NCBI RefSeq assembly: GCF_031769215.1
Contig: NW_026782555.1
Span: 186,001 to 250,000, forward strand
Reading direction: 5' to 3'
DNA: 64,000 bases
Source: Ylistrum balloti
Lineage: Eukaryota
In this document: in pieces, positions 42,001 to 64,000 of the stretch
How positions within the stretch are numbered: position 1 is the first letter of the stretch
Layout: every line of letters starts with the position of its first letter
Translations under genes and position numbers: made by a program
Notes under the pieces: model-generated
Told to the model about the DNA's origin: nothing
Seen by the model: only the letters and a program-made list of their open reading frames with translations
The model's database searches: none

Positions 42001-45000
42001 TGTGTTTTGTACAGGTTCTTGTCTGGTATGTCAGTACACTCCTGCACTGTTATTTTATTTGTGAATGACTGCATTGACAGATGATGCAAGAACCTGTGCA
42101 CTGGGTTGAATATTAGGGTGTATTGTATTTACTCAGCCATGACAGCTACCTTAGTGGTACACCATCTTATTAGACAGTGGAATTAGAGTGTGACATATCA
42201 TAAAGACATGCTCTACATACAGATAAAGATAGGTCACAGTGAAGTCTGCATTGAACAAGACATCAGGCAACTGACGTTAGCCAGATAGCACGTTACACAG
42301 GTAAATTCCTGACTCATTCAGAGGTAAATATGGCCGCTGTGGCACTATAAATCATTATCATTGTTTATCCTATACTAGAACAGTGAATTCAGGTGTTTTC
42401 CTTCAACATGTAACCTGTCTGATAATAACATCTACAGAATAGTCATGGCATTCCAGCAGGAAAACTTTGAATTTCACAATCTATTTGTTGGAACCATTAC
42501 TAGGAACCACAGATTATCTACTAAATATAGGTACAGTTGTAACGGTATCACTTGATTTAAATAACATGTACCTTGCATTCATTAATAATGTGATTATTTT
42601 GATGTTGTTTCAGGGTTTGTGCTGAGTATCTTAAAAATGGGGTCATTTTTAGATTAAATTTGGTTTTACCCTATAGTTTGAATAAACTTCCTGCAAATAA
42701 GCAAGGTCCTATTCAATTTCTACACTTCTACAATGAGGGCTTTCAGTTAAAACTTGTGGTTTGAAATTCATTCATTAATAAGTTGATTTTACTAGTGAAA
42801 TATATTTGCAACTTTTTTATGACAGCTTTTTCTATGGTTTACAAATGTGTCACCAATGGCCTCTCTATAGGGATGGATAGTATTGGACAGTGTGTAGACT
42901 GGTGCTATTTAGGTTTTTTTTGTCTCTTGTTTTATCTATCTTATATAATCTATATTGACTAGAGCAAGCACTTAACAATATTGTTATGTAGGTAGAAATT
43001 AACAGTGGTGAAGAAACCGAACAAAGACCAACAAACTGAAAATGTGATCTGCCTTAAACAGCTGAGTTGTTGGAATTTTTGTAGCAGAATGGACTTGGGT
43101 CTTAATTTAATTCTAATGTTTGTGAAAAATGATGTACAAACTATGTGAGTGAAGCCAGGAAACAGTCAGTTCAAATAATACACTAAATAGACAGTGCTGA
43201 CAAAATTAATTTTCAAATTTTCAAGGCAATATGTCCCTTTATTGCGCCAACACAAAAAACTTTTAAAAAATACTCTAAACATTAAAACAATGGTTACATA
43301 AAAAATATACTAAAAATCACATTATATGAGTCCCATAGGCCTAATGCAGCCAAACACTAGGGAGATTTACATCTACAAATGTATATATAAATGTGCACCT
43401 TACATTGATCAATTTGTACTTGTTGTTAGGCAGACTTGCCTATATCATATCAATTTTTGTGTGTAAGTTTCTGTAATTACTATATATATCAGTTTACATA
43501 CATTTTATTTTAGTACTCAGGTGAACAACATCAATTGATCTTTTCATCTGCAACAAAATATTTTATTGGAATGTAATTTAAGATTTTTTTTTCTTTTTAT
43601 TAAGCCCACCTCACCAGAAAGACCTTACAGACATCTGTGACTACAAAGAACATGCACAGACTGTATGAAGGAGTAAACGATGAGGTCCCTGCGACTAAAG
43701 GCATTGTAACAGGTGATGTCAGTAGGGTTTTTGACGACCTTTTATCAGTACATATTAAGTGATTGTGGTGGGCTGGACGGTTCCTAAACTTGAGAAGCTA
43801 TTTAAATGAAACTCTACAGGATTGTTTGCCACTATATGTAGATGTGCATGCAGGATTTTTTCAGCAGAAATTTGGGTTGCCATGGTAACCAGGTCACTGT
43901 ATAGAGGTTTTTATTTAAAAAGTTTGTCGAGATAAGTCCTAAACCTGTGAACCAATTTCAGTTAAACTATACAGGAATATTAGGAACCATGTGTAGATGT
44001 ATATTAAGTTTATTTTTCTAGCAGAAATTAGGGTTGCCATAGTAACCAGGTTACTATAAAAACATGTGAACAGGTATGTAATGGCCGTAACTCATCAATC
44101 CTTTCATCAATTGTAACTGGGTCAGGCGATGTAACTTATCAATGCCTGTAACTTGACACATTTGGTGTTTCCAGAACCATTGCTATGGAAACATCTTGGA
44201 GACTTCTGATGAGTTGAAAATTAAGATATTAAGATATTATTATTAAGTTAAAAATTGGTTATATCAAGGTTAAGGGGGATGAAAAATTCAGATACAATTT
44301 TTGAAAAAAAAGCAAGAAGTGTTGCCATGGTGAGCAAATGAAGACCTTGGAGGGTTATAAGGACAACCCCTGAGAAACAGTTGTTGATCAGAGAGTGAGT
44401 AGGTATCGTTCAGCCATCCTGGGGATAGTTCTAGTTTACATTCATATAACTTCACCATTGTTGTTAAATTAATATAGTAAGCTTATATAATTTATACTTA
44501 GGTTTCATGACTACATCTTAGTTTGAACAATATTTATTCAATAATCAGTAATTTGACATATACAGATAATTTTATGGATGACTACATTTTGCATGAGAAC
44601 ATGGCATCTTTCAGTGTATTTTATGTTACCAGGTACCATCCCCTCCTGGGTTAATGGTGCTCTCTACAGAAATGGTCCAGCCATATTCCAGATTGGTCCA
44701 GACAAGTTCAAGCATCTTTTTGATGGTATGGGAGCCATACAGAAGTTTGAGGTCAAAGATGGAGCTGCTGTGTTTTCAAGGAAGTTTATCAACAGTAACT
44801 CCTACCAGAAAAACATGTCTGTCAATAGAATAGTCGTTTCAGAATTCGGGACTTATGCTGCGTATCCTGATCCATGTAAAACAATTTTCGAAAGGTACAA
44901 AAAAAATAAGCATACCTATCAATGTGTCTTAACTGGAATCATGAATTGAATGATATAGAAGTAATCAGTATATGTAAAAGGTGGTCATCGATCTAGGTGA

Positions 45001-48000
45001 AAGGTCACATTTAACAACTGCAATAAAAATGTCTTGATTGAGATATTTCCTGAAACTCTAAACATAATGAGTTCATATTCACATCTCAGTATCATAGAGC
45101 AAAGACATTAATTTGCTTATGAACTTTTTTCTAGTTTCAATGAAAGTGATTGCTAATAATAATGTATCAACAGTGATATATATCGATGGAATTAGAATTT
45201 TATTTATTTATAATTGGCTGAAGGCCCAAGTGAGCTCTAGGGATATTGCGGTGTCTGTGTCTGTCAACTTTTAATATTTTTTCCAATAATTCACGAAAGG
45301 CTGAGTGGATTTCAATCGAATTTGGTCTGAAGCGTCCTTGGGGAAAGGGGAACCAATTTTGTGTATTTGGTAGGTCTGGGTCTCTTGTTTATAAACTTCA
45401 CAAATATATGATATACTTTTGAATTGTATTGTAGATTCTTCTCCTATTTCAAACTAGGAAAGCCAACTGACAATACTAACATTACTATCTGGCCATTTAA
45501 AGACAGGCTTTTTACCAGCACAGAGACTACTCACCTCCATGAGATAGACCCAGACAATCTGGACACAATCAGTAAGGTAAGGTAACCGCCAACAGATAGT
45601 AAGGGGAGGTAATCACAAATAGATAGTAAGGAGAGGTTACCACAAATAGATAGTAAGTAGAGGTTACCACAAACAGATAGTAAGGGGAGGTAATCACAAA
45701 TAGATAGTAAGGAGAGGTTACCACAAATAGATAGTAAGTAGAGGTAACCGCCAACAGATAGTAAGGGGAGGTAATCACAAATAGATAGTAAGTTGAGGTT
45801 ACCACAAACAGATAGTAAGGAGAGGTAATCACAAATAGATAGTAAGGGGAGGTAATCACAAATATATTGTAAGGGGAGGTAACCACAAACAGATAGCAAG
45901 GGGAGATAACCACAAATAGATTGTAAGGGAAGGTAACCACAAACAGATAGCAAGGGGAGGTAACCACAAACAGAAAGTAGGGGGAGGTAATCACAGAGAG
46001 ATTGTAAGGTAGCAGTAAACAGTTAATTTGCATTTTTCCTGAAATTATTTGTCATGTTTGAGATATACAGGTGTAGCAGATTGGTTATGAAAAATACATC
46101 ATTACATGTAGATATATTTATAAACTGCATAACAATTACATTAACAGTAGAGAGATGAAATTTGTGTAAAAAAAAATTTCCTCTGATTTCTGACATTTGA
46201 TTGTCATGGTTACCTACTGAAAAAATGCTAAAAATGCAGAAATACTGCTAATTCCAACCCAACACTACAACTTTCTAGGAGAAATTTAATTCTAAACACC
46301 TATCTTACAATCAACAACACTATCATGGTAACAAAGTACTTACATTTCAGCAAATTCCAACTCGGAAATTCTTCATAACATGACCACATGTAAACAATAT
46401 GAAAATTTCACTTCCTGTAAAGCTAGTTTTTGGTGCGTAGACACAGATTCGAGACTGCCTAAATAGTAATCTCCAACAAAAAGCTAAAATATTATCCTGA
46501 AAAAAATGAAACCCCACATTGTCCACTTTAACATGACAGGACCAATTTTAGCATTTTCACCCATGGCCACACCGAGAAACTGTGTACTGCTACCTAAGGG
46601 AAGGTAACCACAAACAGATAGCAAGGAGAGGTAACCACAAACAGAAAGTAAGGGGAGGTAATCACAAATAGATTGTAAGGGAAGGTAACCACAAACAGAT
46701 AGCAAGGGGAGGTAACCACAAAGATATTACAAGGATGTAAGCACACACACATAGTAAATGGAGTTATATTTATATATATTATTTACATGTATATGTATGT
46801 TTTACATTGTGATTTTCTGTTGGCTTGACCCTGAGTCTTGCATATCATTTATAAAAAAGGAGAGTAGAGTAAACAGGCGTGAAACTTCAGAAGATCATAC
46901 AGTAATTCTTGTGCAGGTATAATTGTGATATTTGTATTTTGCAGGTTGATTTGAAGGATAATATGACTATTAGTTCTGCTATAGCACACGTCCACTGGGA
47001 TCGAGATGGAACCATACACAATATTGGTCACCTCTATGAAGGTCATCCTTCCTATTGCCTCTTTAGAATACCAGCAGGCTCAGGTGAGAACATACACAAT
47101 ATTGGTCACCTCTTAGGTCACAAGCAGAATGACAAGAATTACATGTAATTGTATGTCTTTTGTTTCCTGACTTCTCTTTATCATCAGGAAAGTATATGAC
47201 ACCATCAGTTATCAAAGTCTAGTTAATGTTAAACAATGTTGGTGAAATTCAGGATCTAAGATATGTATTGGCAGGATCACACATAGAAACAAGTAAATTC
47301 AAAAATTCAAAAATTAAAAAAAAGCTAAACACAAAACTAAACAGAAAATTTTAACTAAGTCCAATTAATGATAAACTTTAGGTTTGTGTGCAGGGATGAT
47401 CATACATATACATATATATATATATATACACCAGGTTTTGCTAGGACAGCTTAAACACTTTGAGAGAAATTGAGATCAACATAAAACTGATCTGAAAATT
47501 TCAACATGACCCAATTAGTTAACAAAGTCCAAATAACAGCAAACTCATTCTGAATGTGAAATGAGAGTTTGAATGGTTATGTGTAGATAGAAGTATATTT
47601 CATGTTTTGTTGTACCTGTAATAGCTTCTGTGGAGCTTAAAACACAAGCATTTTACATGGCAAAATTAATTAACAAAGTCTGATTAATTATCAGCTAAAA
47701 AAGCTAAAATCTTTGTTGAAAACATTCACCAAGATGTTCATGCTAGTATATAACATTTAAGCAGGTTTGAGAATGTTAGCAGGTGTATAGCACTTGTATT
47801 CAATTGAATTTTGGTTTTTAAACAAATTTTGATGTTGTTACCACGGCAGAGAAGTAATGCCTTTGCCTCACCTTGCGACTCCCGAAGATAAAAATTATGT
47901 GTGACGTATCAATGACTACACTATAACCTTCATCAAATGACCAGTGTGAAGAGTATTTACACGCAGGTATACTGTGTACACTGTGTATGATTGTGATACA

Positions 48001-51000
48001 AGAGTTTCTATCTAGTTAATAATCTGAAAAAAAATTCCAAGATATTTAATGTGACACACATCCAACTCAAGAAACTGTGAGATATTAGACCTAGCCAAGT
48101 ATAATAAGCATACCCATGTGACAAAATCTAATCCCTCCAACTGATAATGACCAGGTTAACTGTAAAATATAAGCTTTGTGAAGTGAAGTACAGTACATCC
48201 AGAATCGCCCGAGTTGTTTTGTGAGTAAGAGTAGATGGTCTTAATTTCAGACATCACAGATGGAAAAGTTGTTGCGTCAGTGAAGTCACGTTGGAAGTTA
48301 AACCCGGGCTACTACCATAGTTTTGCTGTTACTGAAAATTATTATGTGTTTGTGGAACAGCCTTTGGTGATCAATGTCTTGAAAATTTTAACGGCTCGCA
48401 TCCGTGGCTTGAGAATACCAGACTGCCTTGATTATTGGCCTGATGAAAAGGTGATTTACTGTTTAAGACTTTAATTAGCAAAAATTGATCTTAATCTTAT
48501 CTTTCTTTTTCATTGCAAATATACAACTGTGGTAATTTTAAAAATCTATCGTTTGTCATTCCGAATTTTCTTTTAAGAGGAATACATTTTAACTCAAATT
48601 CCAAAGGACTTGATCAAGTAATGTCTTTATTTTCATTTTATGTCAGATAACCCAATGTCTTATTGTAGGCTATTTTCCATGTGATTGATAAAGCTACTGG
48701 AGAACCAGTTAACCAGTCATTTGTCTACCAGTCAGATGCCTTTTTCACATTTCACCATGTCAATGCGTATGAAGATGGAGGTATGCCAGATTTTTATCAG
48801 TTCTTGTACTGCAAAACTTCAAACCATGAAGATGAAGAGTTTTGCCATAATTTGAATTGTCATTTTTGCAGAAGAAGACATATTTAACAATTCTATCTGG
48901 ATTTTTATTTCCAATTTAATGTCTTAGATATTTTTTTCTGAATATGTTTGATATTAACTTGGAATAATTTTGAGTCTGCAAATATTTGAACATATTGTTT
49001 TAAAAAAATATTGACATTTGAAAACTGTCAGCCATTTATGCTATATGTTGGATTATTTCAACAGATTGAATCTGAGTCTGTTTGAAATTTAAAAGTAATT
49101 TTACTGTTCATGGCAAATTAAGAAATTGCCTCAACTCATCAACCATAGTGAACGATGACAAATGATTACACATGTACAATGTATTTAATTGTCTGCATTA
49201 AAATTTTGTTCAGACCATGCCAGCTACACACAGTTTGAGGCCCTGACAGTGTATCATATTTCATAAGATCACAGAGTATAGAATGTTCATAAACCCAGTA
49301 TGGCAACAGAATGTTATATTGTCAGAAAATGACTGCAATATAAATTACATTCAGGCCATCCCCATACTATAAACTGACAGTACTACTAATGTCATCATCA
49401 TCGTTACTTTAATTACAAAATTGGTTTCAAAGATATAATTTTTATGGTGATTAAACCCGAGCTTATTGCTTGCTTGGGATGTTATTTCAGGTCTGGTTTA
49501 ATTATTTCTTTAATGAAGATTGCATAAAATCCACAGGCTACTGGATGCTTTCAAGTCAGGTGTGAAGGTCATAGATAAAGGTCATTGTTACTATATATAG
49601 GAAATAAATTTTATCACCTCTTACCTCATACTTGGGTTGATCAAGCTTTGTGTAGTGCTTCATTACCAAAAGTGGATACTTATATAAACTGCATCTGAAA
49701 CTCATTTTGACTGCCTTGACACTCTCATTTTGTGTTTTCCATTTTAGAAATATCTAGATTTTGATGATTTTTTCACAAAACGTTCTTTTAAAGGTTGATG
49801 AAGATCAATTAAGATATCAATGGATAATGTTTTAACTGGGAAGTACATTTTATCCTGGCTCAGACATTGTCAGAATATGCCTGCCACATATATTTTTGCT
49901 GTATTCGACAGTGACGGATAACAGCAGTATTTTAGCATGAGCGGTAATTCGACAGAATTATTCTCTGAATTTACTTAAATATTACGTTTAGAATTGTAAT
50001 AGTTATTGAAATACGCGATTTTACATGTTGTAATAAACAAGTTCAGTTATGAATATTCATAAAATCGCTGTTATATCTGATGAAAGTTTGGAACTATGTT
50101 TTCACCTGGAGCAATTGTTTTGGCATCTGTCATCAGGCAAAATTCAGCGTAACATCAATGTTAGGTAAACAAAGATTGAATAACAAAACGGTTTAAGTTT
50201 CAATAGTCTGATTTTCAATCAATGTTGCAGGATAAATAAAATACATGGTCAATGTCTTCAATGTAAACTGCATTTTGGCTCGGTATAGAAAGACAAAAGT
50301 GGCTTGCCACTTTTATTTTGATATATTTGAAGACATTGACCATATATTCTCTATGTACATGTTTGTGGTGAATTTGTCGCTGATCAGTATGATATATCAT
50401 AGCTACTAAAATGTGTGTATGTAAACTGATCTTATGTCCAGCAGAAATATTTGCTATGAGAAGTTAAATATTTTACGTCAGAGAAACAACAAAACAATAT
50501 ATTTCCTTCTGAATGACTGGATTTCTCCTTTGTGTTGTCAGATTCATTGGTTCTGGACCTGTGTTCATACAAAGATGCCCAAATAATTAAAAAAGTGTAT
50601 ATGAAAGATTTCTCCAAAGACCGAGTAGATGAGACCTTGAAGCATTTACCCAAGGCTATTCTGTCACGGTTTGTTTTACCACTGGGAGTCAACTCAGAGG
50701 TAAGTACACTATAAGTAATATTGTAAAATGTTTATCTCTAACACAAACAGTGATTGAAATGTGAATTTGTGAGCATTGGAAAATATCTTTTTCCTTTGTC
50801 AAAAAAAAAACCCACACAAATAACTGAGTCTTGACAACTTTTCAATTTTCAGTGATTGGATGAAAGAGTCAAAAAGTCGAGACGCATTTTTGTATTTTTA
50901 GCACTTATCATAAAAGCTCAGTTATTTGCTCTCTGTTTAACAAAGGACGAAATGGTCGCTTTTGAATGTTCGCAACAAGAGTTTTCAATATGTCAAAGGT

Positions 51001-54000
51001 GCTACGTCTTTTCAAGTAATATTAATACTCAACTGATGAATCTCATAGTTTTACAACTGTGGTTAATGTTGATAATGTAATGAGTTATTACCCTACAGTA
51101 AATCCTGTCATCAAGATGTAATGTACGGCTCTTTTATTTTGCGGGTGTTTAATTCTGCGACTCTTTTTGAAACTTATTCAGGGGGATTCAATTTCACAAA
51201 TCATATTACTGTTTTTTCTAGTATACCTATCAGCATTTCAGAACACTTTACGAAGATCTAAAATATTCATGAGGTATAAAATATATCAATGTTAAATGAC
51301 CACTTTATCATACCTGTTTGTAAAGGAAAGGAACTTTCTGGTTTTAATTATTTATAGACTCCTAAAGACAAGAACTTGATTGAGATGTCTGGATGTAAGG
51401 CTACAGCTGTCAGGACGTCAGATGACACAGTACATTGTACACATGATGCCATATACAATGAAGGTAAAGAAGGTTTAAAAGTCATATTGAAACAAGCACG
51501 GTCAAAAACATCAATAACTGAACATAATTTTGGTCAGAAAAGGTAAAAATGTCAAATTTTGGTAAATTCTATGAATATGTATTTCATGTTTAAAAATGCA
51601 TAATTATTTAAATACTGGTATTGCTACCTCTTATTTCTATGGTGCTTACAAACTGTTAAGTAAAATAGACCTGGAAATATGGTATAGTCAGATAAAAAAG
51701 AAAAAGAATTAAGTTTTAGTAGTCTTTAGTACTCTTTAGTTTGCTTAAAATTGACCATATTGACAAAGATGGATAGGACAGACAACACATACAGTGTAAT
51801 TGTACATATGTTTATTTTACAATAAATCTTGACACAAAGTAGGCACTGGGTTTATTGTATCGATGAAGCTTTAGTTAGCTGATCTGATCCGTAGGGTCAA
51901 ATAACCTATAGCCATCCTGTTTCAGCTTTCATTGTACATTGTCCCTAACATTTTAAATGCAACTTCTACTCAAGTTTTTTTTTTTAAATGCTGATAGTGA
52001 TATAAAAAATTAACCGTCTAATTCAAAAGCATTTTATTTCTCAGGATTTGAACTTCCGACCGTGAACTATGACCTATACAACGGTCGTCAGTATCGTTAC
52101 AGCTATGGATTCAGCGTACAAAGTGAAAAAACTGTTGCTGTAAGTACCCATAGTTTTGTGTCAGTAAAGACAAAAGTTTGTAGATATAACAAAGTGGTGA
52201 TATATTCTGGAGGTTTAACTGTTGGTGCCTGGGATGGCTGTGGGTTTGGGAGGTTTGGCTGGGAGGTGCTTGGGATGGTTGCAGGTTTGGGAGGTTTGGC
52301 TGGTAGGTGCCTGGGATGGCTGTAGGTTTTGGAGGTTTGGCTGGTAGGTGCCTGGGATGGTGTAGATTTGGGAGGTTTGACTGGTAGCTGCCTGGGATGA
52401 CTGTAGGTTTGGGAGGTTTGGCTGGGAGGTGCCTTGAATGGTTGCAGGTTTGGGAGGTTTGGCTGATAGGTGCCTGCGATGGTTGCAGGTTTTGGAGGTT
52501 TGGCTGGTAGATGCCTGGGATGGCTGTAGGTTTGGGAGGTTTGGCTGGTAGGTGCCTGGGATGGCTGTAGGTTTTGGAGGTTTGGCTGGTAGGTGCCTGG
52601 GATGGTGTAGATTTTGGAGGTTTGGCTGGGAGGTGCCTTGAATGGTTGCAGGTTTGGGAGGTTTGGCTGATAGGTGCCTGCGATGGTTGCAGGTTTTGGA
52701 GGTTTGGCTGGTAGATGCCTGGGATGGCTGTAGGTTTGGGATGTTTGGCTGATTGGTGCCTGGGATGGCTGTAGGTTTGGGAGGTTTGGCTGGTAGGTGC
52801 CTGGGATGGCTGTAGGTTTTGGAGGTTTGGCTGGTAGGTGCCTGGGATGGTGTAGATTTTGGAGGTTTGGCTGGTAGGTGCCTGGGATGGCTGTAGGTTT
52901 TGGAGGTTTGGCTGGTAGGTGCCTGGGATGGTGTAGATTTTGGAGGTTTGGCTGGTAGGTGCCTGGGATGGTGTAGATTTTGGAAGTTTGGCTGGTAGGT
53001 GCCTGGGATGGTTGCAGGTTTGGAAGGTTTGGCTGGTAGGTGCCTGGGATGGTTGCAGGTTTGGAAGGTTTGGCTGGTAGGTGCCTTGAATGGTTGCAGG
53101 TTTTGGAGGTTTGGCTGGAGGTACCTGGGATGGCTGTAGGTTAGGGATGTTTGGCTGGTAGGTGCCTGGGATTACTGTAGGTTTGGGAGGTTTGGCTGGT
53201 AGGTGCCTGTGATGGTTGCTGGTGTGGGAGGTTTGGCTGGTAGGTGCCTGTGATGGTTGCTGGTGTGGGAGATTTTGCTGGTAGGTGCTTTGTATGGCAA
53301 TATGAAATGAAAAATGATTTAAGATCCTTGTGCAGTATAACTTCTTATTTCTAATATCTGTGTAAAGGTATATTGGGTAAGAAAATGATGAATATTATCT
53401 AGATACCTCTTTCAAACTTATAATGCTATATAGTTGGGAGTATATTTATCTCACTCTAATATAATCGGAGGTAGTGATAAAACAAAATGGATGTCTACTT
53501 TGGTTGACAGTTGGTGAAGGTAGACCTCCCCAATAAAACATCTCTTCAGTGGGACTGTGAAGGGTGTGTGCCATCAGAACCAATCTTTGTGGCCGATCCA
53601 GACGGAACTGAGGAAGATGATGGTAGGTTGGACTGTTGACCATGTTAAATGTGAAAGTTACAAAAGTAAAAAGGATGTTTGACATTTTGCTTGTGCAAAT
53701 CTTAGTGCCCTATAGTATCATAATGTACCATAAAATTTTATTTTCCAATTTTTTTTTGTGTGTGTGAAGGACAAAGGATCCTGCAAGGCTGCCATCAATG
53801 ATTGTTGAGATTATTTTGTACACAAAACTAACACAAAAAGGATTTGACGATTTACGTTCGAACAACAATAATGAATGAAATAATTACTTTATATATTATG
53901 CAAACTATCTGAGTACTTGTAGACATCATCCAAAATCAGGACGAATGGTTTAAAACATGATAGCAACTAGCAAGACAAGAAACTGCTGTTCCCAGTTTGA

Positions 54001-55165
54001 GATAACGAAATATTTTGAAACACATGTATGCTTGACTTTTAAGAAATGACAGGTTTTATTTTATTTTCCTTCATGTTGGATATTGCCAACACAAAACCAT
54101 GAGCAAATGTCTGCATGTGTCATTGTGGAAATTAGTGTTGACATACAAGTAAACAGATTATGGATGGAGACTGATGACTATGTATATGTTATTTATTAAA
54201 ATCAGTCTCATTGGTATTTATGAAGCTTATCTATGAGATTTACAGTTAAGATAAATTGGGGATATCCTTAGCATGATACTCTTATCAAAATGTGTAGTGA
54301 AAGACTGTCACTCTTTGACAGTACATATTATTACATTCCGTACTCAATACGGAATACTCATTTGCTAGCAAATACAGTGTTGGGGCCTCAATTTGTGTCT
54401 GCTGGCATGTGCAGGATGTGACAGCAAGACACGAGAAAAAAAAACTTGAGATTGTAATTACCTGATTTTATCTTCAATAGATAGATATTCACTTGGACCT
54501 CTCATTACAACACTGAACACTGTTGATTAGTGTGAAGTGGTTGTGTACACTAACATAGATCAATCTAGGTTCATGAATAGCTGTGTGTATCAAGTAACAG
54601 TTCTGATGTCAAACAGTCAGGAAGTGCATGAGTTTGGCAGTAGGTACATATGCAAATTATGTAGGTGCACACTTTTTGCATGTTTTACAGTACGCCCATC
54701 TTTCTCTCCATCAGACGGTATGTAAAAAGGGGGTGGGGGGAAAGTAAATTGTTAAAACATAATGAAGTAACGGACGCTATATAGTTAATAGATAACTAAG
54801 CTCACATTTGGTAATTAGCTTTTTTTTGGTAATTAGCCCATGCTTGGTATAAGCCTATATGTATTACTTTTCGGAAGAATTACTCGTAAATGTAATTCTA
54901 GTGTCCTATCTCCCATTTCACTTTAGGATAAGTACAGTAAGTGGGTGTATGCTGTGTTTCTGATGTGAAGAAATTATTGAGAATTTTCAAAATTTCAGGT
55001 GTGGTGCTGTCAGCAGTAATGACTTTAGGAGAGGGTGATGATAACTTCCTGCTCGTCTTGGATGGAAAGACTTTTACTGAGCGTGCCAGAGCTCGATTCC
55101 CAGGAGTCCAAATCAACAGGGATCTTCATGGATTTTTTAGAAGGACTGTCGATCACCGGTTATAG
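36074..55165 (+). CDS. BCO2: Carotenoid cleavage oxygenase (BCO1/BCO2/RPE65/NinaB family), BCO2-like, 550 aa; exons 36074-36125 (putative leader), 43605-43712, 44633-44894, 45435-45576, 46945-47083, 48251-48450, 48669-48780, 50542-50699, 51358-51463, 52045-52139, 53511-53622, 54999-55165
   Basis: G.IPSWVNGALYRNGP, HLFDG, NRIVVSEFGT..YPDPCKTIFERF, TDNTN, four Fe-ligand His contexts (AHVHWD, YYHSF, FHHVNAYE, LHGFF), FELPTVNY, PSEPIFVADPDGTEEDDGVVLS. All junctions GT-AG and in phase, 1653 nt total. Exons 2-12 are secure; the leader exon and the BCO2 versus BCO1 label are inferred. Confidence 0.92.
36442..36513 (-). mobile_element. tRNA-derived SINE head in BCO intron 1
   Basis: Reverse complement tttagtttgatcggtgaagtgacggaccagtaaggctgtgggtcatgggttcgatacccagcagaggcatgc, with A-box-like and B-box-like segments. 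Confidence 0.65.
37070..37745. repeat. 73-bp dimeric minisatellite (37-bp plus 36-bp related subunits) in BCO intron 1
   Basis: gtaccttgttggtcggaacagtgtagatctatacaca / gtacctcgtcagttgaaactgttaagtctatacata alternate. Confidence 0.93.
37812..41651 (+). mobile_element. Decayed hAT-superfamily DNA transposon (ZNF862-like transposase pseudogene) inside BCO intron 1; boundaries approximate
   Basis: Fragments: CTNFKTESILAHEGSGQHK (Zn-finger-like), FFSVICDGCTD (first catalytic Asp), KIVGFGSDGTNAMM...LQGIH*FVHYHELAYKNAIK (CxxH motif with Cys mutated to a stop), RWLPH, and LTLPAHSADAETGFSEM*LVKGD*KSRL (hAT C-terminal dimerisation domain). Degenerate terminal inverted repeats ggggctggaaattagc (left) versus aacttaaattctacctctg (right). 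Confidence 0.85.
43730..44430. mobile_element. Non-autonomous interspersed repeat in BCO intron 2 with internal gttgccatggtaacc subrepeats
   Basis: Repeated cagcagaaattt/agggttgccat(g/a)gtaaccagg blocks ~160 bp apart. Confidence 0.5.
45571..46010 (+). repeat. 27-bp minisatellite (agtaaggggaggtaatcacaaatagat) starting at the BCO exon 4 donor; a detached island of the same unit lies at ~46596-46730
   Basis: Tandem units overlap the exon end (cacaatcagtaag|gtaagg) and explain the 9-aa periodic ORFs. Confidence 0.95.
52215..53290 (+). repeat. ~40-41-bp G-rich minisatellite (gggatggctgtaggtttgggaggtttggctggtaggtgcct) in BCO intron 10
   Basis: About 26 tandem copies with strong G-over-C skew on the sense strand. 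Confidence 0.95.
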
Positions 55166-57487: not shown

Positions 57488-57590
57488 GACCTTCATGTTA
57501 GCTAGGTTGGTTGAATTTTAGACAAGTAAACCAGAGGTCCCTGGTTCAAATCTAAGCAGAGGCATGGAAATACATAATGACCTCTGTTAT
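57488..57590 (+). mobile_element. tRNA-derived SINE head directly followed by a 38-bp array
   Basis: A-box-like tagctaggttggt and B-box-like ggttcaaatc, then gcagaggcat as in the other copies. Confidence 0.65.
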
Positions 57591-58020
57591 ACAGGGATGT
57601 ATACCGTACTCGACCCAATAATTTGTATACAGGGATGTATACCGTACTCGACCCAATAATTTGTATACAGGGATGTATACGGTACTCGACCGAATAATTT
57701 GTATACAGGGATGTATACCGTACTCGTCCCAATAATTTGTATACAGGGATGTATACCGTACTCGACCCAACAATTTGTATACAGGGATGTATACCGTACT
57801 CGACCCAATAATTTGTATACAGGGATGTATACCGTACTCAACCCAAGAATTTGTATACAGGGATGTATACCGTGCTCGACCCAATAATTTGTATACAGGG
57901 ATGTATACCGTGCTCGACCTAATAATTCATTTACAGGGATGTTTACCATACTCAACCTAATAATCAGTGTACAGGGATGTGCACCATATTTGACCTAATC
58001 ATAGGTATGCAGGGATGCAA
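57585..58020. repeat. 38-bp minisatellite (tatacagggatgtataccgtactcgacccaataatttg)
   Basis: About 10 copies; the unit reappears degenerate at ~58435-58490, after the interrupting element. Confidence 0.93.
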
Positions 58021-58084
58021 ACTGTACTAATTCTTATTCTTATATCAAACTTAAGCTAATAATTCTTATACAGAGATGTAAGAA

Positions 58085-58415
58085 GGAGTAATGAAAAATA
58101 CCCTGCCATTTCTAGGGCGGCCTGTACTCTCAGCTTCTACACTACTCCCCTCCTTCTCAAAGTCTTTGACTCTGAAGACAACGACAACCCAGGTTCAGTA
58201 TCTCCAAGGAAGCATCACAATCTCTTATATCTTCTATCCTTGGAGTGGTCAATGGCACCAAATCTGTAATAGGAAAGTGTGATGAAAAATTTCCTGCCAC
58301 AGACGGAGTTCAAACTAGTGAGCCATCCGTCTCTAGCCAGACACTCTACCACTGGACTAAAGGGAAATTCCCACTAGCTGAGGCTAGTAAGGCGACCTTT
58401 ACTCTCAAATTCTAC
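58085..58415 (-). mobile_element. Second copy of the tRNA-containing element seen in NAA38 intron 1
   Basis: Shared blocks: gcgacct(g/t)tactctca, cactactcccc, tctttga.tc.gaagac, atctcca.ggaag, tggagtgg.caa, ccaaatctgtaat.ggaa, gttc(g/a)aactag, gtctctagc, gctagtaaggcgacc. Confidence 0.7.
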
Positions 58416-60160
58416 ACCATATTTAACCTTATATATATGCAGGGATGCATACCAAATCCCACCTAATAATCTGTGTATAGGGACCCTATGCCTGAGGGGT
58501 GGCACAATAGTGGAGATATAACCGTTTCCTTCAAATGCTTCTTTTGTAGGAATGTCAGCCTGATGGATTTTGTCCCAATTTGATCAAAAGCACGATGCCT
58601 TTGGGAAAGGAAAACAAATTTGTATAAATTGCAAGTCTTGACCACACAGGATTGAAAGGGCTGGGCCTAATAGGAAATCCTTCTTTTGTAGGAATGACAT
58701 GATTTTGTCCTAGTAACCTTAATGTGAAGAGAAACCAATTTGATGTAAATGGAGGCAAGTTCCTCTGCACATATTTTCTGCTACAAAGGTGGTTTTTGTA
58801 AGACAGGTTTTACCAGACTTTTTATCCACGATATTCAGACATTCAGACTCTGTAATTTTTCAACATACTTTTTTTTGCTTTTTATTCTTTTATAAAATTT
58901 CGGTAAAAAAATGTAACAGATTCTGTTTTGAATATCATTTTGGTTTATGTTATTATTCTTATTATCTTCAAAAAGAAAGTGTTGGGAAGAGTGTATATTC
59001 CATTTCATTTATAAAATGTTGAAATCTTTTGTCATGACACGGACTTATATACACATATATATATGTGTATATAAGTCCGTGGTCATGAGAGCGCTCCAAT
59101 GCGAAGAACACACGACACCTTGTTATTCGGGACATACTTGCCGTTTAAACAGATCCGAGTATACCGAATGTTATGTTAACTTCCGGTTTAAAACTGAAAA
59201 TGGTGTTTTTCATGTGTATTGTTTGAAGGGGTTTTTTTTTGTTACTTTACCAGTTTTGATTGCGACGAAAGAATATATCGCCGTTTTGAAACGTTAGTAT
59301 ATTCACTTTAACACTTACTTTTGACAAGTATTTACTCATATTTTGTGTTTTGTTTTCTACTTTCGTTTTCTCATGCCATGAGAGATCATAAACAGGTAGA
59401 TCAACAATAACTAATTCATATTAATTCATACTGATTCATAACTAATTCATATATATTTAAATATGCATCGACCGCACTCGATTTAACTTTGTAATTGTTT
59501 TATGTTCTATGTATGTGATGTAATTTTTGTCATATTTGTGTCTTGATAAAGAGACAGGTTGCCTCGAAAATCTTACCATTCACTTGTCTGTACTGTCGTT
59601 ATTACTTCATTTATCATATGTGTGTGTATACATATATCAACATATTGAACATAATTAATATTTCAAGCAGTGAGAATGTAATGTTATTACAGAACATGTT
59701 TGAATTTAGTTTGAAAGTTTCTGACTTCATTCATGATTTTATTTTTGTCACAGTCAAAAAAACTCGGATAGTCAGATTACAGAATCCTTCTCACTGTTTT
59801 GAAATGTCGCACATAGTTTTGATAAAGAATTGAGATTTATGAATACATATTTAACAAAATGCAATTATTATATGAGAGTACAGTGCAGTAGCACCATACA
59901 ATATCACCTCTCTACTTTATATATATGTAAAACTATTACATATGGTCTATATTCCTGTCACATAGGATGAAGTATAAATGTACGGTTATCCATACCAATG
60001 GAATAGATTAAGATTTAAAGGTAAAATGTTAAACGATATGCATTCATTCGTTACACAGAAATTGTTATGCATTTATTGAGGAAATATTTGGGATAGAATC
60101 ATTCAGAGAAAATCCAGCCATTTTCATAATGTTGATTTTTGTATTTTTCAGAATGTTTGT

Positions 60161-63035
60161 ATGAAATACAATGTCTTATTTATGCACAAAAGTATTTTGA
60201 GTGCAGAAGTAGCAATGGCAAGTGGATCACATGGAGACAAGCGTAATATAAAAATTATAGCCAGCGGGTCTCGAGCTTACGACGAAGATTACGTTAAGAA
60301 AAAACTTGCAAGAGCACAACAAAAGGTAAGAAAAATAATGGTTAGCATTTTTGGAAGCAAGTCAATGATGATTTGACAAACATGCATGAAGTTTAGAGAA
60401 TAAATGACTTATTTACATCACAAGTGAATTTATAATTTGAGAAATATAAAAAAACAAATTAGTTTTTCATTTGAATACCAATATAAAACTTTCATGCAAG
60501 TTCATTTTTCAATTCGAAGGATGTTGAGCTTACTTGCTCTGACATGCCACAGAATAGTGCAGTGCATTCTTGTGGTAAAATAATTGTTCACTAGAACATT
60601 TCTCATAGCATTTTGAACAAAAAAAACTGCAAGGATATGATTAATAAAAACAAACTTGATGTACATACCTGTATGTGAGAGGGGATTTTGAAATGGAATG
60701 TTATGAAACATTAATGGAAACGGATTTTGCATTCATTGACAACTGAACATGAATTTCCATTTGATAGATATATGTGATTTGTGAAATAATTGTGAAAATA
60801 TGGGACAGAATCCTTTTTATCACATGGTTGATTATTCAAGCAAATGTTATAAAATGAAGGAGATGAACAATCAAACTTGACAACAAACATGACGTAATTT
60901 CAACTCTATATCAATATCTATTGTCCCTATCTTGTGGTAAGTGTAATATCATTTCACTCTCTTAACTTGACATCTTGATAGTTTATATTACATAGGAATA
61001 TATTCACTTTATGACAAATTGTGTGATAGAAATATATTTACAACTTTTGTAAATGAAAGAAAAAAATGTAATTATATATATGTTGACTGTACTAGGTAGC
61101 TGCAGCCATGAAAAAAATGCAAAAGGCTAACCACTATGTGAATTACGATGTCAGCAGCAGTTCGGATTCATCATCATCTGATGATGAGGGAATAGGTTCT
61201 TCTTTCCAAGGTTTGTTTATCACACCACATTCTCTGACAAGACACAAAAGAACTCATTTTCTTGAATAATTTTTATATGTTTATACTTTTATTGCTGATG
61301 ATAAACTTGGAGAAGATTATCATGAAGGTATTAAACAAACTACATCAGGCTTCCTTACTGAAGTAATCGGAGACAGGTCTCTTCTGAAGTAAATCGGAAC
61401 TATAACTTTGCAAAATGTTAAGCAAGGAGCATGAAAGTTGGTGTATATACTAGTCATGCTAAGGTTTTGTGCAGTAGACAAAATTCTGGGCTTGAAACCC
61501 CTTAATTACAGAGTAATTGCCCTTTGTTAAAATTTTATGTCCAGTAAAGCTGTTTTCAGGGAAAATTCATCAGTTTCACTGATACTCTTGTTTACTATCC
61601 TGCATTTTGATTTTGTCTTGAAATCCTTCTTTAAGTTTTAGCATAGGACAGACATACTTTAATTTTGTTCACTGCAGGTTTCAGTAACAAGCAAGGCGGT
61701 GCAAAAATGGAAATTAAAAAACAAATGGGTGATGGAATTGCCAACATAACTATCGGCAGTGCTAAAAATATACAAATGGGTGACCGTAATGTTATGGTGA
61801 TAAACAAGGGTGGTGCCAAACCTGAACAGAAATCTGTGGCAGAGGATGTTGATATGCCGTCCGCACAAGATGAATCATCGCAGGATCTGACACTGACAGC
61901 TGCTCAACAGGCAGTCCTTGGTGAGTTCCCTTTCAGGCAAATATAGTTGTCATTGGTTCTGTTTACAAGATTTCTCAGCACTGAATAAAATAAATGGATT
62001 TAAGTTGGTTTTTATGAGTGAAAAAGAGTAAATTTGTTATAGAGCACCATGTAAACCTGTCCTTTACTGAAAAATTTCTGCTTATCATAAAAATAACTGT
62101 CTGCCCATTCATCATTGATAAATGTCTGCCCTTTCATCATTGATAAAATCTGCCCATTCATCATTGATAAATGCCTGCCAATTCCTTAATGATCACTGTC
62201 TGCCCTTTTATCATTGATAAATGTCAACCCATTCATCATTGATAAATGTTTGCTTGTTCATCGTTGATCAACATCTGCCAATTCCTTATTGATCCATGTC
62301 TTCTGCCCTTTCATCATTGATAAATGTCTACCCATTCATCGTTGATAAATGTCTACCAATTCATCATTGATAAATGTCTACCCATTCATCATTGATAAAT
62401 GTCTACCAATTCATCATTGATAAATGTCTACCCATTCATCATTGATAAATTCCTGAATGATAACAACAGTTACCAATAGCACATCAATATATATGACAAC
62501 CTTTGAACTCTGTTGTTAAGACCTGCTCTGGATAAGAGCATGTCTCCTTCGATGTAAACATCACCAACTGTAACAGGATTTCCATCAGATGTCACAGATA
62601 ATGTAAAGTTGGTGCATACCAGGTTAGTTTTCAATCACAGTAGACACGACTGGTCATGAAATTCTGTAATCCACACAATGGCTTCAAGTAGCTATTATAA
62701 ATGTACAATATATATATACAATTTACATATGTGCAATGGATATAAACAGGTCATCTGTATGTGCCAGCCTTATGAAAGTTTCTTAAGCAAAAACCTTAAA
62801 TTAAATCTTTCGATAGGAACTCCTCGAAATAAAGGAAGAATCTAATTTCAGAACATTTGTTTTACACACTTTGTCTGATCTCTATACATGATGTTAGTTT
62901 CAAAATATTGGCACACTTTCGGCAATGTGTTTATTTTTTAATCACATTATCTGACCACAGATTCAGAGGAGGTTGTTGATGACAGGAGCTTACGTATCCT
63001 TTCAACATGCATTGGGAACCCATGGCGACGAATTT
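60161..63035 (+). CDS. RHIM-containing, kinase-less adaptor with a probable C-terminal death domain (IMD/RIP1-like); exons 60161(or 60215)-60325, 61096-61210, 61678-61920, 62961-63035; 3' end not located in the window
   Basis: In-phase GT-AG splicing (0,1,1) gives MASGSHGDKRNIKIIASGSRAYDEDYVKKKLARAQQK-VAAAMKKMQKANHYVNYDVSSSSDSSSSDDEGIGSSFQ-GFSNKQGGAKMEIKKQMGDGIANITIGSAKNIQMGDRNVMVINKGG...AVL-DSEEVVDDRSLRILSTCIGNPWRRI. The RHIM core IQMG is at 61770-61781. The last exon resembles death-domain helices 1-2. Confidence 0.75.
61330..61592. mobile_element. Truncated copy of the 11.4-12.3-kb interspersed element in intron 2 of the RHIM gene
   Basis: Shared ttacagagtaattgccctttgttaaaatttt and terminal ttcatcagtttcactgatactcttgt. 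Confidence 0.65.
62095..62452. repeat. 25-bp minisatellite (ataaatgtctacccattcatcattg) in intron 3 of the RHIM gene
   Basis: About 14 tandem copies are directly visible. Confidence 0.92.
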
Positions 63036-64000
63036 GTAAGTAATCCCTCATAATGTTTATCTTTGAATTGGTTCATTGCCTTGGTGTTGTGATGAACTGC
63101 ATGGTTGTTTGTTTTTGCTGGGCTGGTATTTCGGGATTAAATCCCTTTCAAATATTACCAACGATATAATATGCAATGTGACATCGATTACATTGCCATA
63201 TTGTTTGAATAGTTCAATAATGCTGAAGATATTATCAAGTTTAATTGAAATATCCTGAAAAAAAGTTAATCGCTAGGGATCAAATGATTCCAGCAAATGT
63301 CTTTCTTTTTCTGTTTATAATGTAAACTAAAGTATTGATGAGGAATGGATCCCTGCCCAGAAAAATCGTCCAGTTAATTTGTAAATAGGATAGAGGCTCA
63401 TGGTGACCTATTGGGATGGCTTTTTGTATGGAATCTCAAACTTTTAACATTTTTAACTTCTGGAAAAATCCTGATCCAATTTCACTGAAAATTTACAGAA
63501 ACCTTCTATGGCTATAGGATAATTATACCTTTAAACTATATGGTTGTCACCTCCATGGGCCTGATTGGCAGTGCCAAAAGTGGTAAAATTGACTCAAATT
63601 TCGAAAAAAAAACCCCACCTGGATTGGGTACATGAAAATGTTCTTCATGGATATAAAGGTCATAAGGTGCTTTACCAAAATTGTGATTTCATGACTGCAG
63701 GGTCTTGTATGTTTTCCACTGTGGAGGGGGTAAAGTTTACTATAGTTTATATAGGAAAATTACCTCTTTTATTAGCACTGTTCATGTGGCAAGGCAAGGC
63801 AAGTGACTGTGACACCTTCAACAATGGTTATGTGAAAAAAAAATAGTGAACTTGTACTTAAATTCAGGAGAGTAGAAAGCCTGCTGGCAACAGATAGAGG
63901 CAGATTGTCTGTAACCTTAAATTGATAAAACAGTTGTTACAATACACAGAAAATGTTCCATCCACAAACGACCACTTGCTTCCTCCTTCTGTAATATTGA

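What the first reader, a model, noticed from the sequence alone, without database searches (positions are those of the whole stretch)
60161..63035. Kinase-less RHIM plus death-domain adaptor: candidate amyloid-signalling (IMD/RIP1-like) node in an invertebrate
Seen: exon 3 encodes NITIGSAKNIQMGDRNVMVI (61743-61802). This fits the RHIM pattern of a hydrophobic-x-hydrophobic strand, a core (I/V)Q(I/V/L/M)G, then xxNx-hydrophobic, as in RIPK1 (IQIG) and RIPK3 (VQVG). The next in-phase exon reads VVDDRSLRILSTCIGNPWRRI, like death-domain helices 1-2 (compare FADD ..ICDNVGKDWRRL). The N-terminus is short, basic then Ser/Asp-rich, with no kinase domain. Established: RHIMs polymerise into amyloid signalling platforms in mammalian necroptosis, and cryptic RHIMs do so in the Drosophila PGRP-LC/IMD pathway; IMD is a (c)RHIM plus death-domain protein without a kinase. 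Inference: an IMD/RIP1-type adaptor with a near-canonical RHIM, pointing to a RHIM-amyloid immune or cell-death pathway in this lineage whose partners are unknown.
Basis: partly seen in the sequence, partly recalled or inferred. Interest (0 to 1): 0.85.

Follow-up and report, generated by a model that had tools for sequence, protein, structure and literature searches.

The report
Scallop kinase-less RHIM plus death-domain adaptor
This is a real, conserved scallop gene for a small protein joining a RIPK1/RIPK3-like amyloid-type interaction motif (RHIM) to a RIPK1-type death domain with no kinase, a natural version of the RIPK1 C-terminal half that has already been shown to signal for a mussel RIPK1, so it is interesting but not a new kind of system.

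Summary
Four clean GT-AG exons in the window (60215/60161-63035, + strand) and a fifth 826 nt beyond its end splice exactly into RefSeq XP_060080499.1, "uncharacterized protein LOC132559886" of the scallop Ylistrum balloti (267 aa).

Orthologues exist in Mizuhopecten, Pecten, Argopecten and one unidentified transcriptome. All are 228-267 aa and lack a kinase.

- **Death domain:** it passes Pfam Death, and its nearest solved relative by sequence and by fold is the RIPK1 death domain.
- **RHIM-like block:** it is the best-conserved part of the protein (82% pairwise identity) and sits between poorly conserved, low-confidence linkers. The tetrads are IQMG, VQVG, IQVG and VQLG. It aligns without gaps to the solved RIPK3 and RIPK1 RHIM cores (0-9 of 2000 shuffles do as well).
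- **Pfam RHIM:** three orthologues match at the same position, only one at the curated cut-off. The Ylistrum sequence itself does not match.

Amyloid formation, partners and output are untested.

Novelty is moderate. RIPK1 with a RHIM and death domain is published for zebra mussel, and its kinase-less C-terminus activates NF-kB RHIM-dependently. I found no published account of the natural kinase-less scallop form.

The scan noted other RHIM-like motifs on other genes of this genome, not this gene.

The parts
60161..60214 (+). In-frame upstream ATG extension (18 aa, MKYNVLFMHKSILSAEVA) used by the RefSeq model; probably 5' UTR
   Evidence: Absent from all four orthologues, which start at MASG. 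By inspection, this ATG has a weak context (T at -3, A at +4), while the ATG at 60215 has G at -3 and G at +4.
60215..60325 (+). Coding exon 1 from the conserved start MASG: a short N-I-x-I-I-x-x-G strand, the DEDY motif and the start of a predicted helix
   Evidence: GT donor at 60326. The exon border K|VAAAM is shared with the Argopecten isoforms and with Mizuhopecten. The N-terminus aligns across the five proteins.
61096..61210 (+). Coding exon 2: end of the helix (VAAAMKKMQKA) and an acidic Ser/Asp-rich linker
   Evidence: AG/GT borders, ends in phase 1. The linker is poorly conserved, 34% pairwise identity.
61678..61920 (+). Coding exon 3 (243 nt, phase 1-1 symmetric): the whole RHIM-like block and most of the linker to the death domain
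   Evidence: The same exon is found in Mizuhopecten by tblastn.
61743..61802 (+). RHIM-like motif NITIGSAKNIQMGDRNVMVI; core tetrad IQMG at 61770-61781
   Evidence: Core of 13 columns: 9 invariant, 82% pairwise identity. Ungapped alignment to the solved RIPK3 and RIPK1 RHIM cores, reached by 3-7 of 2000 shuffles for this protein (reference sequences confirmed). Orthologous blocks hit Pfam RHIM at 15.0-20.7 bits. pLDDT is below 50 for residues 124-136, about 49 averaged over 121-130.
61869..61871 (+). Asp158 codon, the only invariant residue in the 31-column linker between the RHIM and the death domain; possible caspase site (speculative)
   Evidence: Contexts are AQD|E, IRD|A, IED|V, ITD|V and LPD|V.
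62961..63035 (+). Coding exon 4 (75 nt, phase 1-1): the segment before the death domain and its first helix (DSEEVVDDRSLRILSTCIGNPWRRI). The last exon, holding the rest of the death domain, lies outside the window at window-equivalent 64826-65031.
   Evidence: The phmmer alignment to the RIPK1 death domain starts at residue 168.

Best explanation
The gene (Ylistrum balloti LOC132559886) encodes a cytosolic adaptor of about 250 aa without any enzyme domain. It has four modules: a conserved N-terminal strand-plus-helix of unknown role, an acidic linker, a RHIM, and a C-terminal RIPK1-type death domain.

Shown here:
- the gene structure;
- the absence of a kinase;
- the death domain and its closest kinship to the RIPK1 death domain;
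- strong conservation of a RHIM-like block that lies in otherwise variable sequence modelled with low confidence.

Inferred:
- The death domain recruits the protein into death-domain assemblies (a FADD-, TRADD- or receptor-type partner).
- The RHIM then stacks with itself or with other RHIM-bearing proteins into a beta-sheet (amyloid-type) oligomer. This concentrates the complex and drives NF-kB activation and/or caspase-8-type cell death.
- In this it would work like Drosophila IMD, and like the kinase-less RIPK1 C-terminus of zebra mussel, which activates NF-kB in a RHIM-dependent way.
For: - **Gene model and identity:**
- **Orthologues:** same five-exon structure in Mizuhopecten. Short contigs hold the whole uninterrupted ORF, although the genomic genes of Ylistrum and Mizuhopecten span about 4.9 kb. 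These are a 985-nt contig from the unidentified species, read directly, and a 1007-nt contig of an Argopecten-like protein, judged from its length alone.
- **No kinase:**
- **Death domain:** Pfam Death matches in 5 of 5 members, best E 4.9e-12. phmmer against PDB gives the RIPK1 death domain at 3.4e-9, against 5.7e-4 for ankyrin-2 and 1.5e-3 for FADD. The AlphaFold2 model has pLDDT 85-93 there. Foldseek ranks the RIPK1 death-domain filament 9v9e first, TM 0.79 by target, 28% identity.
- **RHIM, conservation:** the core has 82% identity, against 57% for the death domain and 23-34% for the linkers. Tetrads are IQMG, VQVG, IQVG, VQLG, IQMG.
- **RHIM, Pfam PF12721:** the same aligned positions match in Argopecten (20.7 bits, E 2.9e-4, cut-off 20), in P0004 (16.1 bits) and in Mizuhopecten (15.0 bits).
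- **RHIM, targeted alignment:** ungapped alignments of 15-21 residues to the solved RIPK3 and RIPK1 RHIM cores are reached by 0-9 of 2000 composition-preserving shuffles.
- **Function by analogy:** the zebra mussel RIPK1 C-terminus needs its RHIM tetrad to activate NF-kB in HEK293T cells (PMC12119088). Cryptic RHIMs of IMD and PGRPs form amyloid fibrils and are needed for signalling (Kleino et al., as summarised in PMC10268257).
- **Lead only:** the nearest ESM Atlas clusters are short arthropod death-domain proteins named RIPK1-like, scores 0.88-0.89.
Against: - The Ylistrum and Pecten sequences give no Pfam RHIM hit. Only one orthologue reaches the cut-off, and only when the block is scanned alone.
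- A profile of the block finds no RIPK chain in PDB. Its best hit is the LpxD hexapeptide beta-helix at E 0.17. For scale, the human RIPK3 RHIM finds the RIPK1 RHIM only at E 0.01-0.18.
- Met at the third tetrad position is not among the variants tested in the literature I read.
- No RNA run holds the Ylistrum locus, so expression in this species is not shown here.
- No fibril, binding or signalling data exist for any member.
- The five orthologues are not independent samples.
Confidence: 0.6

Rival explanations
1. Decoy or brake. The kinase-less RHIM plus death-domain protein caps or competes with assemblies of a full-length RIPK1 or of other RHIM proteins and so dampens signalling. Viral RHIM proteins such as M45 do this, and Drosophila Pirk does it in the IMD pathway.
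For: It has the same two interaction modules but no enzymatic or known effector-recruiting part. Full-length RIPK1 exists in other bivalves (PMC12119088), so a scallop paralogue with a kinase may exist. Kajava et al. list Pirk as a RHIM-like negative regulator (PMC4262963).
Against: The engineered kinase-less RIPK1 C-terminus of zebra mussel activates NF-kB instead of blocking it (PMC12119088). IMD, which has the same layout, is a positive adaptor. Whether scallops have a full-length RIPK1 could not be checked with the tools here.
Confidence: 0.17
2. A death-domain adaptor only. The conserved block is an ordinary beta-strand or linear binding motif that merely resembles a RHIM, and no amyloid-type assembly is involved.
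For: There is no Pfam RHIM hit for the Ylistrum protein, and orthologues score mostly below the cut-off. Weak hits of similar strength go to unrelated beta-rich models: EAD10 at E 0.009-0.04 and the LpxD beta-helix at E 0.17.
Against: Here the motif is conserved in every orthologue and is the most conserved part of the protein. It aligns without gaps to solved RHIM cores with the same strand-to-tetrad spacing. It lies upstream of a RIPK1-type death domain and is separated from it by a linker, the same order in which Fay et al. place the RHIM tetrad and death domain in the C-terminal part of RIPK1 (PMC12119088).
Confidence: 0.17
3. An annotation fragment: the 3' half of an ordinary RIPK1 gene whose kinase exons lie further upstream.
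For: NCBI names two orthologues 'RIPK1-like'. A possible splice acceptor (tttttcag) lies just before 60152.
Against: The MASG start is conserved in five species. An orthologue's transcript has an in-frame stop upstream of that start. No kinase motifs occur in 60 kb upstream, and an unrelated RPE65-family gene lies in between on the same strand. All Argopecten isoforms are short.
Confidence: 0.03

Closest known systems
RIPK1 (vertebrates; also zebra mussel, Lingula, lancelet; Fay et al. 2025, PMC12119088)
   Same: A RHIM with a V/I-Q-x-G tetrad lies upstream of a C-terminal death domain, separated from it by a linker. The death domain is the closest solved relative by sequence (E 3.4e-9) and by fold. 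The pre-domain segment also aligns (AAQQAVLDS with AKYQAIFDN), as does the Arg of the RKL motif.
   Different: There is no kinase domain and no long intermediate domain. Instead there is a 50-residue conserved N-terminal strand-plus-helix module with no known relative. By the published definition (kinase plus RHIM tetrad plus death domain) it is not a RIPK1.
Drosophila and other arthropod IMD
   Same: A small kinase-less protein with a RHIM-type motif in a disordered region and a C-terminal death domain. The nearest ESM Atlas clusters are short arthropod death-domain proteins named RIPK1-like (a lead only).
   Different: The IMD motif is a cryptic RHIM with a VxxG core (PMC10268257), whereas here the tetrad is canonical or near-canonical. 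I saw no conserved N-terminal caspase site followed by an Ala-led IAP-binding motif (inspection; the feature itself is from my own knowledge of IMD). Orthology was not tested. The literature I read says no Imd adaptor has been found in molluscs (PMC9835746).
Branchiostoma and other invertebrate RHIM proteins (Kajava et al. 2014, PMC4262963)
   Same: A RHIM sits where other innate-immunity proteins carry a death-fold interaction module. Death domains appear among the domains drawn in the paper's architecture figure of human, Drosophila and Branchiostoma RHIM proteins.
   Different: These are different proteins. No scallop or other mollusc member is named in that paper's text.
Fungal HET-s prion-forming domain and NWD2 signalling amyloids
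   Same: A short motif in disordered sequence, proposed to template a cross-beta fold for signal transfer.
   Different: There is no sequence match here. HET-s has two pseudo-repeats; this protein has one conserved tetrad. The upstream 'KQMG' is not conserved across the orthologues.

Membership tests
RHIM (RIP homotypic interaction motif, Pfam PF12721) | Core tetrad (V/I)-Q-(V/I/L/C)-G | tested here: met
   VQVG (Mizuhopecten), IQVG (Pecten) and VQLG (Argopecten) are canonical. Ylistrum and P0004 have IQMG, with Met at position 3. The V/I-Q-V/I-G definition is from PMC12119088; Leu and Cys at position 3 are from my own knowledge of other RHIM proteins.
RHIM (RIP homotypic interaction motif, Pfam PF12721) | Flanks: an upstream hydrophobic-x-hydrophobic strand, Asn three residues after the Gly, alternating hydrophobics downstream, in register with solved RHIM cores | tested here: met
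   Ungapped local alignments of 15-21 residues to RIPK3 (7dac) and RIPK1 (8ib0) cores score 31-44, reached by 0-9 of 2000 shuffles.
RHIM (RIP homotypic interaction motif, Pfam PF12721) | Score at or above the Pfam gathering cut-off (20 bits) | tested here: inconclusive
   Ylistrum and Pecten: no hit. Argopecten block 20.7 bits (16.2 in the whole protein), P0004 16.1, Mizuhopecten 15.0. All hits fall at the same aligned positions, profile 4-22 of 22.
RHIM (RIP homotypic interaction motif, Pfam PF12721) | Lies in a natively unfolded region | tested here: met
   pLDDT is below 50 for residues 67-101, 124-136 and 138-163. The flanking linkers have 23-34% identity and many gaps.
RHIM (RIP homotypic interaction motif, Pfam PF12721) | Forms tetrad-dependent amyloid-type homo- or hetero-oligomers | not testable with these tools
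   Needs ThT, electron microscopy or co-assembly assays.
Death domain (Pfam PF00531) | Profile match above the cut-off and a six-helix bundle fold | tested here: met
   35.6 bits against 22.6 for this protein, and 5 of 5 members match. Helices span residues 168-266 with pLDDT 85-93. Foldseek top hits are all death domains.
RIPK1 (as defined in PMC12119088) | N-terminal RIP-type kinase domain | tested here: not met
   No kinase motifs in the window, no Pkinase Pfam hit in any member, and an in-frame stop before the start in an orthologue's transcript.
RIPK1 (as defined in PMC12119088) | C-terminal RHIM tetrad followed by a death domain of RIPK1 type | tested here: met
IMD (arthropod immune deficiency adaptor) | Kinase-less, RHIM-type motif, C-terminal death domain | tested here: met
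IMD (arthropod immune deficiency adaptor) | N-terminal caspase (Dredd) cleavage site that exposes an Ala-led IAP-binding motif | tested here: not met
   By inspection of alignment A1, no conserved Asp-Ala site occurs near the N-terminus. DEDY is DPEY in Argopecten. The one invariant linker Asp is followed by E, A or V. The feature itself is from my own knowledge of Drosophila IMD.
IMD (arthropod immune deficiency adaptor) | Orthology by phylogeny of the death domain | not tested
   No IMD or invertebrate RIPK1 sequences could be fetched. The protein searches found only the scallop family.

The most novel reading that the evidence does not exclude
Scallops use this kinase-less RHIM plus death-domain protein as the hub of an amyloid-templated innate immune network. 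RHIM-bearing STAND or SAMD9-like sensors, noted elsewhere in this genome by the scan (unchecked), would seed its RHIM, and its RIPK1-type death domain would pass the signal to FADD/caspase-8 and NF-kB. It would then stand for the ancestral bilaterian adaptor from which arthropod IMD and, by fusion to a kinase, RIPK1 both descend.
Probability: 0.2. Interest if true: 0.7.

Novelty: new variant of a known kind. Interest (0 to 1): 0.45.

Why it matters
The literature I read says that molluscs lack the Imd adaptor and RHIM-bearing PGRPs (PMC9835746). A 2025 study counts as RIPK1 homologues only proteins that have a kinase (PMC12119088). This scallop family fills the gap between the two: it is laid out like IMD but keeps a mammalian-type RHIM tetrad and a RIPK1-type death domain.

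It is a small, easily expressed protein. With it one could test whether RHIM-driven assembly is an old, kinase-independent way of switching on NF-kB or cell death in Spiralia. It could also serve as bait to fish for RHIM partners in commercially important bivalves.

It does not open a new class of system.

Tried and rejected
- **Single-sequence Pfam scan of the four window exons:** only a weak EAD10 hit, no RHIM and no Death, because the death domain is cut by the window end.
- **ESM Atlas with exon 3 alone:** uninformative, scores 0.81-0.83.
- **phmmer and a profile of the RHIM block against PDB:** no RIPK chains. Best hits were a dehydrogenase and the LpxD beta-helix, at chance level.
- **EAD10:** a mixed alpha/beta bacterial effector-associated domain (PMC7159879). 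All hits are below its cut-off, so I treated it as a composition effect. A literature search for 'EAD10' returned only animal facial-coding papers.
- **Protein searches:** an alignment query and a query limited to the RHIM plus death-domain region found no members beyond the five. Family range outside scallops therefore remains unknown; the search tool also cannot see proteins longer than 467 aa.
- **Supplements of PMC12119088:** no mollusc sequences held as text.
- **A second RHIM:** the upstream 'KQMG' is not conserved (R in Argopecten, absent in P0004).
- **N-terminal module:** no Pfam or PDB relative, only tropomyosin-like coiled-coil noise.
- **kB site:** a perfect GGGAAATTCC lies 1.85 kb upstream, but the window-wide count is not above chance.
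- **RNA evidence for this species:** only one DNA run holds the locus.
- **Fold search of the ESM Atlas:** returned only a generic mollusc death-domain cluster.
Full report
**What is in the sequence**

Reading 59800-64000 shows four exons on the + strand with GT-AG borders and matching phases:
- 60215-60325, or from 60161 if the upstream in-frame ATG is used;
- 61096-61210;
- 61678-61920;
- 62961-63035.

They give 181 residues from MASG. The order is a short basic and hydrophobic N-terminus, a stretch later predicted helical, a Ser/Asp-rich acidic stretch, the block GIANITIGSAKNIQMGDRNVMVIN, a linker, then DSEEVVDDRSLRILSTCIGNPWRRI. After that the reading frame leaves the window. No continuation of the frame lies in 63036-64000.

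**Identity of the gene**

phmmer with exon 3 against 1.84 billion representatives found two true relatives, P0001 and P0004. The two other hits, P0002 and P0003, are unrelated repeat proteins. A word-indexed search added three more proteins with their source names:

| Id | Species | Name in source | Length |
|---|---|---|---|
| P0006 | Ylistrum balloti | uncharacterized protein LOC132559886 | 267 aa |
| P0001 | Mizuhopecten yessoensis | RIPK1-like | 242 aa |
| P0005 | Pecten maximus | uncharacterized protein | 241 aa |
| P0007 | Argopecten irradians | RIPK1-like isoform X2 | 240 aa |
| P0004 | unidentified (Logan transcriptome run) | none | 228 aa |

P0006 contains the window's 181 residues letter for letter. 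The contig that encodes it (JAUZWB010000701.1, assembly GCA_031769215.1) is identical to the window over the overlap. With a fifth exon at window-equivalent 64826-65031, the spliced product equals XP_060080499.1. So the window is Ylistrum balloti, and the gene is already in RefSeq, unnamed.

Mizuhopecten has the same five-exon layout.

Two short contigs hold a whole ORF, although the genomic genes of Ylistrum and Mizuhopecten span about 4.9 kb. One is the 985-nt contig of P0004, which I read and found uninterrupted. The other is a 1007-nt contig of an Argopecten-like protein of 240 aa, judged from its length alone. These are spliced transcripts, so the family is expressed. For Ylistrum itself no RNA run was found.

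**No kinase**

- All five proteins start MASG.
- The P0004 transcript has an in-frame stop five codons upstream of that start.
- Argopecten isoforms X1, X2 and X3 are 258, 240 and 202 aa. They differ only at the exon 1/2 junction or in the start.
- A regex scan of all six frames of the 64-kb window finds no HRDLKxxN, DFG, APE or glycine-loop motif.
- The nearest upstream gene on the same strand is an RPE65-family carotenoid oxygenase ending about 5 kb away.

The reading 'fragment of an ordinary RIPK1' is therefore rejected. The 18 extra residues of the RefSeq model (from 60161) have no counterpart in the orthologues. Their ATG has a poor context, so 60215 is the likelier start (inspection).

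**Death domain**

- Pfam Death is hit by all five members. This protein scores 35.6 bits against a cut-off of 22.6, and the best member reaches E 4.9e-12.
- Against all PDB sequences the best hits are RIPK1 death domains (6ac5, 9vin, 9v9e) at E 3.4e-9. Next come ankyrin-2 at 5.7e-4 and FADD at 1.5e-3.
- The alignment starts before the domain proper (AAQQAVLDS with AKYQAIFDN). It also keeps the Arg of the RKL motif, which is invariant in the scallop family.
- An AlphaFold2 model built on the five-sequence alignment gives helices over residues 168-266 with pLDDT 85-93.
- Foldseek ranks the human RIPK1 death-domain filament first (TM 0.79 by target, 28% identity), then RAIDD, p84, ankyrin-G, FADD and TRADD.

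**RHIM-like block**

*Conservation:*

| Region (P0006 numbering) | Mean pairwise identity | Invariant columns |
|---|---|---|
| N-terminal module (19-67) | 54% | 15 of 52 |
| Acidic linker (68-100) | 34% | 3 of 33 |
| RHIM-like block (101-137) | 64% | 19 of 38 |
| Core, 13 columns (124-136) | 82% | 9 of 13 |
| Linker to the death domain (138-165) | 23% | 1 of 31 |
| Pre-domain and death domain (166-262) | 57% | 31 of 98 |

- **Tetrads:** IQMG (Ylistrum, P0004), VQVG (Mizuhopecten), IQVG (Pecten) and VQLG (Argopecten). Each is followed by GD(R/H)N(V/T)MVIN.
- **Model:** the region has low confidence (pLDDT 46-54). A weak hairpin is predicted at 103-120 and no structure over the core, as expected for a motif that is unfolded in the monomer.
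- **Pfam RHIM (22 positions, cut-off 20 bits):** no match for the Ylistrum or Pecten sequences. The orthologous positions do match in Argopecten (20.7 bits, E 2.9e-4 for the block alone; 16.2 bits in the whole protein), in P0004 (16.1 bits) and in Mizuhopecten (15.0 bits).
- **How weak RHIM statistics are:** a bait peptide recalled from memory for human RIPK3 was confirmed letter for letter in PDB entries 7dac and 7da4. Yet it finds RIPK1 RHIM chains only at 15-18 bits, E 0.01-0.18.
- **Targeted test:** I made local alignments of the whole non-death-domain part of each scallop protein to those two solved cores. They are ungapped, 15-21 residues long, always on the same block, and score 31-44. 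Only 0-9 of 2000 composition-preserving shuffles do as well.
- **Background:** the extended motif occurs once in 127,996 six-frame codons of the window.

I conclude that this is a genuine RHIM-type motif at sequence level. The caveat is that the window's own sequence fails the curated profile. Amyloid formation is not shown.

**Weak similarities I do not rely on**

These are sub-threshold hits of the block to Pfam EAD10 (E 0.009-0.04) and to the LpxD hexapeptide beta-helix in PDB (E 0.17). EAD10 is a mixed alpha/beta adaptor domain of bacterial conflict systems (PMC7159879). I take both for the signature of short beta-strand and turn repeats.

**How it most likely works**

Shown: a kinase-less protein with a RIPK1-type death domain and a conserved RHIM-type motif in sequence that is otherwise variable and modelled with low confidence.

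Inferred: the death domain joins death-domain oligomers (FADD, TRADD or a receptor). The RHIM stacks homotypically or with other RHIM proteins. The output is NF-kB activation and/or caspase-8-type death.

The inference rests on three published points:
- Fay et al. (PMC12119088) found RIPK1 with kinase, RHIM tetrad and death domain in zebra mussel, other Spiralia, Lingula and lancelets. They showed that the zebra mussel RIPK1 C-terminus, made without its kinase, activates NF-kB in HEK293T cells only with an intact tetrad.
- Cryptic RHIMs of Drosophila PGRPs and IMD form fibrils and are needed for signalling (Kleino et al., as summarised in PMC10268257).
- Kajava et al. (PMC4262963) found RHIMs in innate-immunity architectures of invertebrates.

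Rivals:
- a decoy that caps RHIM or death-domain assemblies;
- a death-domain adaptor whose conserved block is not amyloid-forming;
- an annotation fragment (rejected above).

**Comparison and novelty**

By the published definition it is not a RIPK1, because it has no kinase. It has the layout of IMD, but with a canonical rather than cryptic RHIM, and without a conserved IMD-type N-terminal caspase site and IAP-binding motif (inspection; that feature is from my own knowledge). ESM Atlas features place it nearest to short arthropod death-domain proteins named RIPK1-like (0.88-0.89, below the 0.9 guide). This is a lead only.

Orus-Alcalde et al. (PMC9835746) state that the Imd adaptor and RHIM-bearing PGRPs have not been found in molluscs. 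In six literature searches I found no paper describing this scallop family.

The concept of RHIM plus death-domain signalling in bivalves is already published and partly tested. The gene is also already in RefSeq, and two orthologues are auto-named RIPK1-like. I therefore class it as a new variant of a known kind, of moderate interest.

**Earlier notes of this scan**

Notes on the same genome mention RHIM-like motifs on other genes. These include a SAMD9-like STAND NTPase, an nSTAND3 NLR-like gene and a motif on a skippable exon. One case was judged a coincidence because the motif was not conserved. None concerns this gene. I did not test them. They are candidate partners to check, and the coincidence case is the reason the conservation test here matters.

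**Limits**

The range of the family outside scallops is open.
- Whether a full-length RIPK1 exists in scallops is open.
- Orthology to IMD is open.

Noticed in passing
window 61678-61920 and 62961-63035: Exons 3 (243 nt) and 4 (75 nt) are both phase 1-1 symmetric. Skipping exon 3 would give an in-frame death-domain protein without the RHIM. No isoform showing this was seen; Argopecten X1-X3 all keep the exon.
   Followed up: partly
window 61869-61871 (Asp158 of P0006): This is the only invariant residue in the 31-column linker between the RHIM and the death domain. Contexts are AQD|E, IRD|A, IED|V, ITD|V and LPD|V. It may be a caspase cleavage site that would separate the RHIM from the death domain; this is speculative.
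   Followed up: partly
window 60215-60325 and 61096-61140 (residues 19-67 of P0006): A conserved N-terminal module (MASG, an N-I-x-I-I-x-x-G strand, DEDY, then the helix VKKKLERANQKVAAAM) has no Pfam or PDB relative, only tropomyosin-like noise. Its role is unknown.
   Followed up: partly
window 58362-58372: A perfect palindromic NF-kB consensus GGGAAATTCC lies 1.85 kb upstream of the start codon. The window-wide count of the pattern (5 against 2.96 expected) is not significant.
   Followed up: partly
window 62093-62450: A 25-bp minisatellite of about 14 copies (consensus ATAAATGTCTGCCCATTCATCATTG) lies in intron 3.
   Followed up: no
window 57512-58104: A 38-bp tandem satellite of about 15 copies lies in the intergenic region between the RPE65-family gene and this gene. 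It produces long spurious ORFs on the - strand.
   Followed up: no
window about 44578-55165, + strand: The upstream neighbour is a carotenoid oxygenase gene of the RPE65 family (550-aa product in the public annotation). One exon ORF lies at 44578-44949.
   Followed up: no
window 61698-61808 (RHIM block): The block gives sub-threshold hits to Pfam EAD10, a bacterial effector-associated adaptor domain, in 3 of 5 orthologues. It also hits the LpxD left-handed beta-helix in PDB (E 0.17). Both are probably a composition effect of strand and turn repeats.
   Followed up: partly
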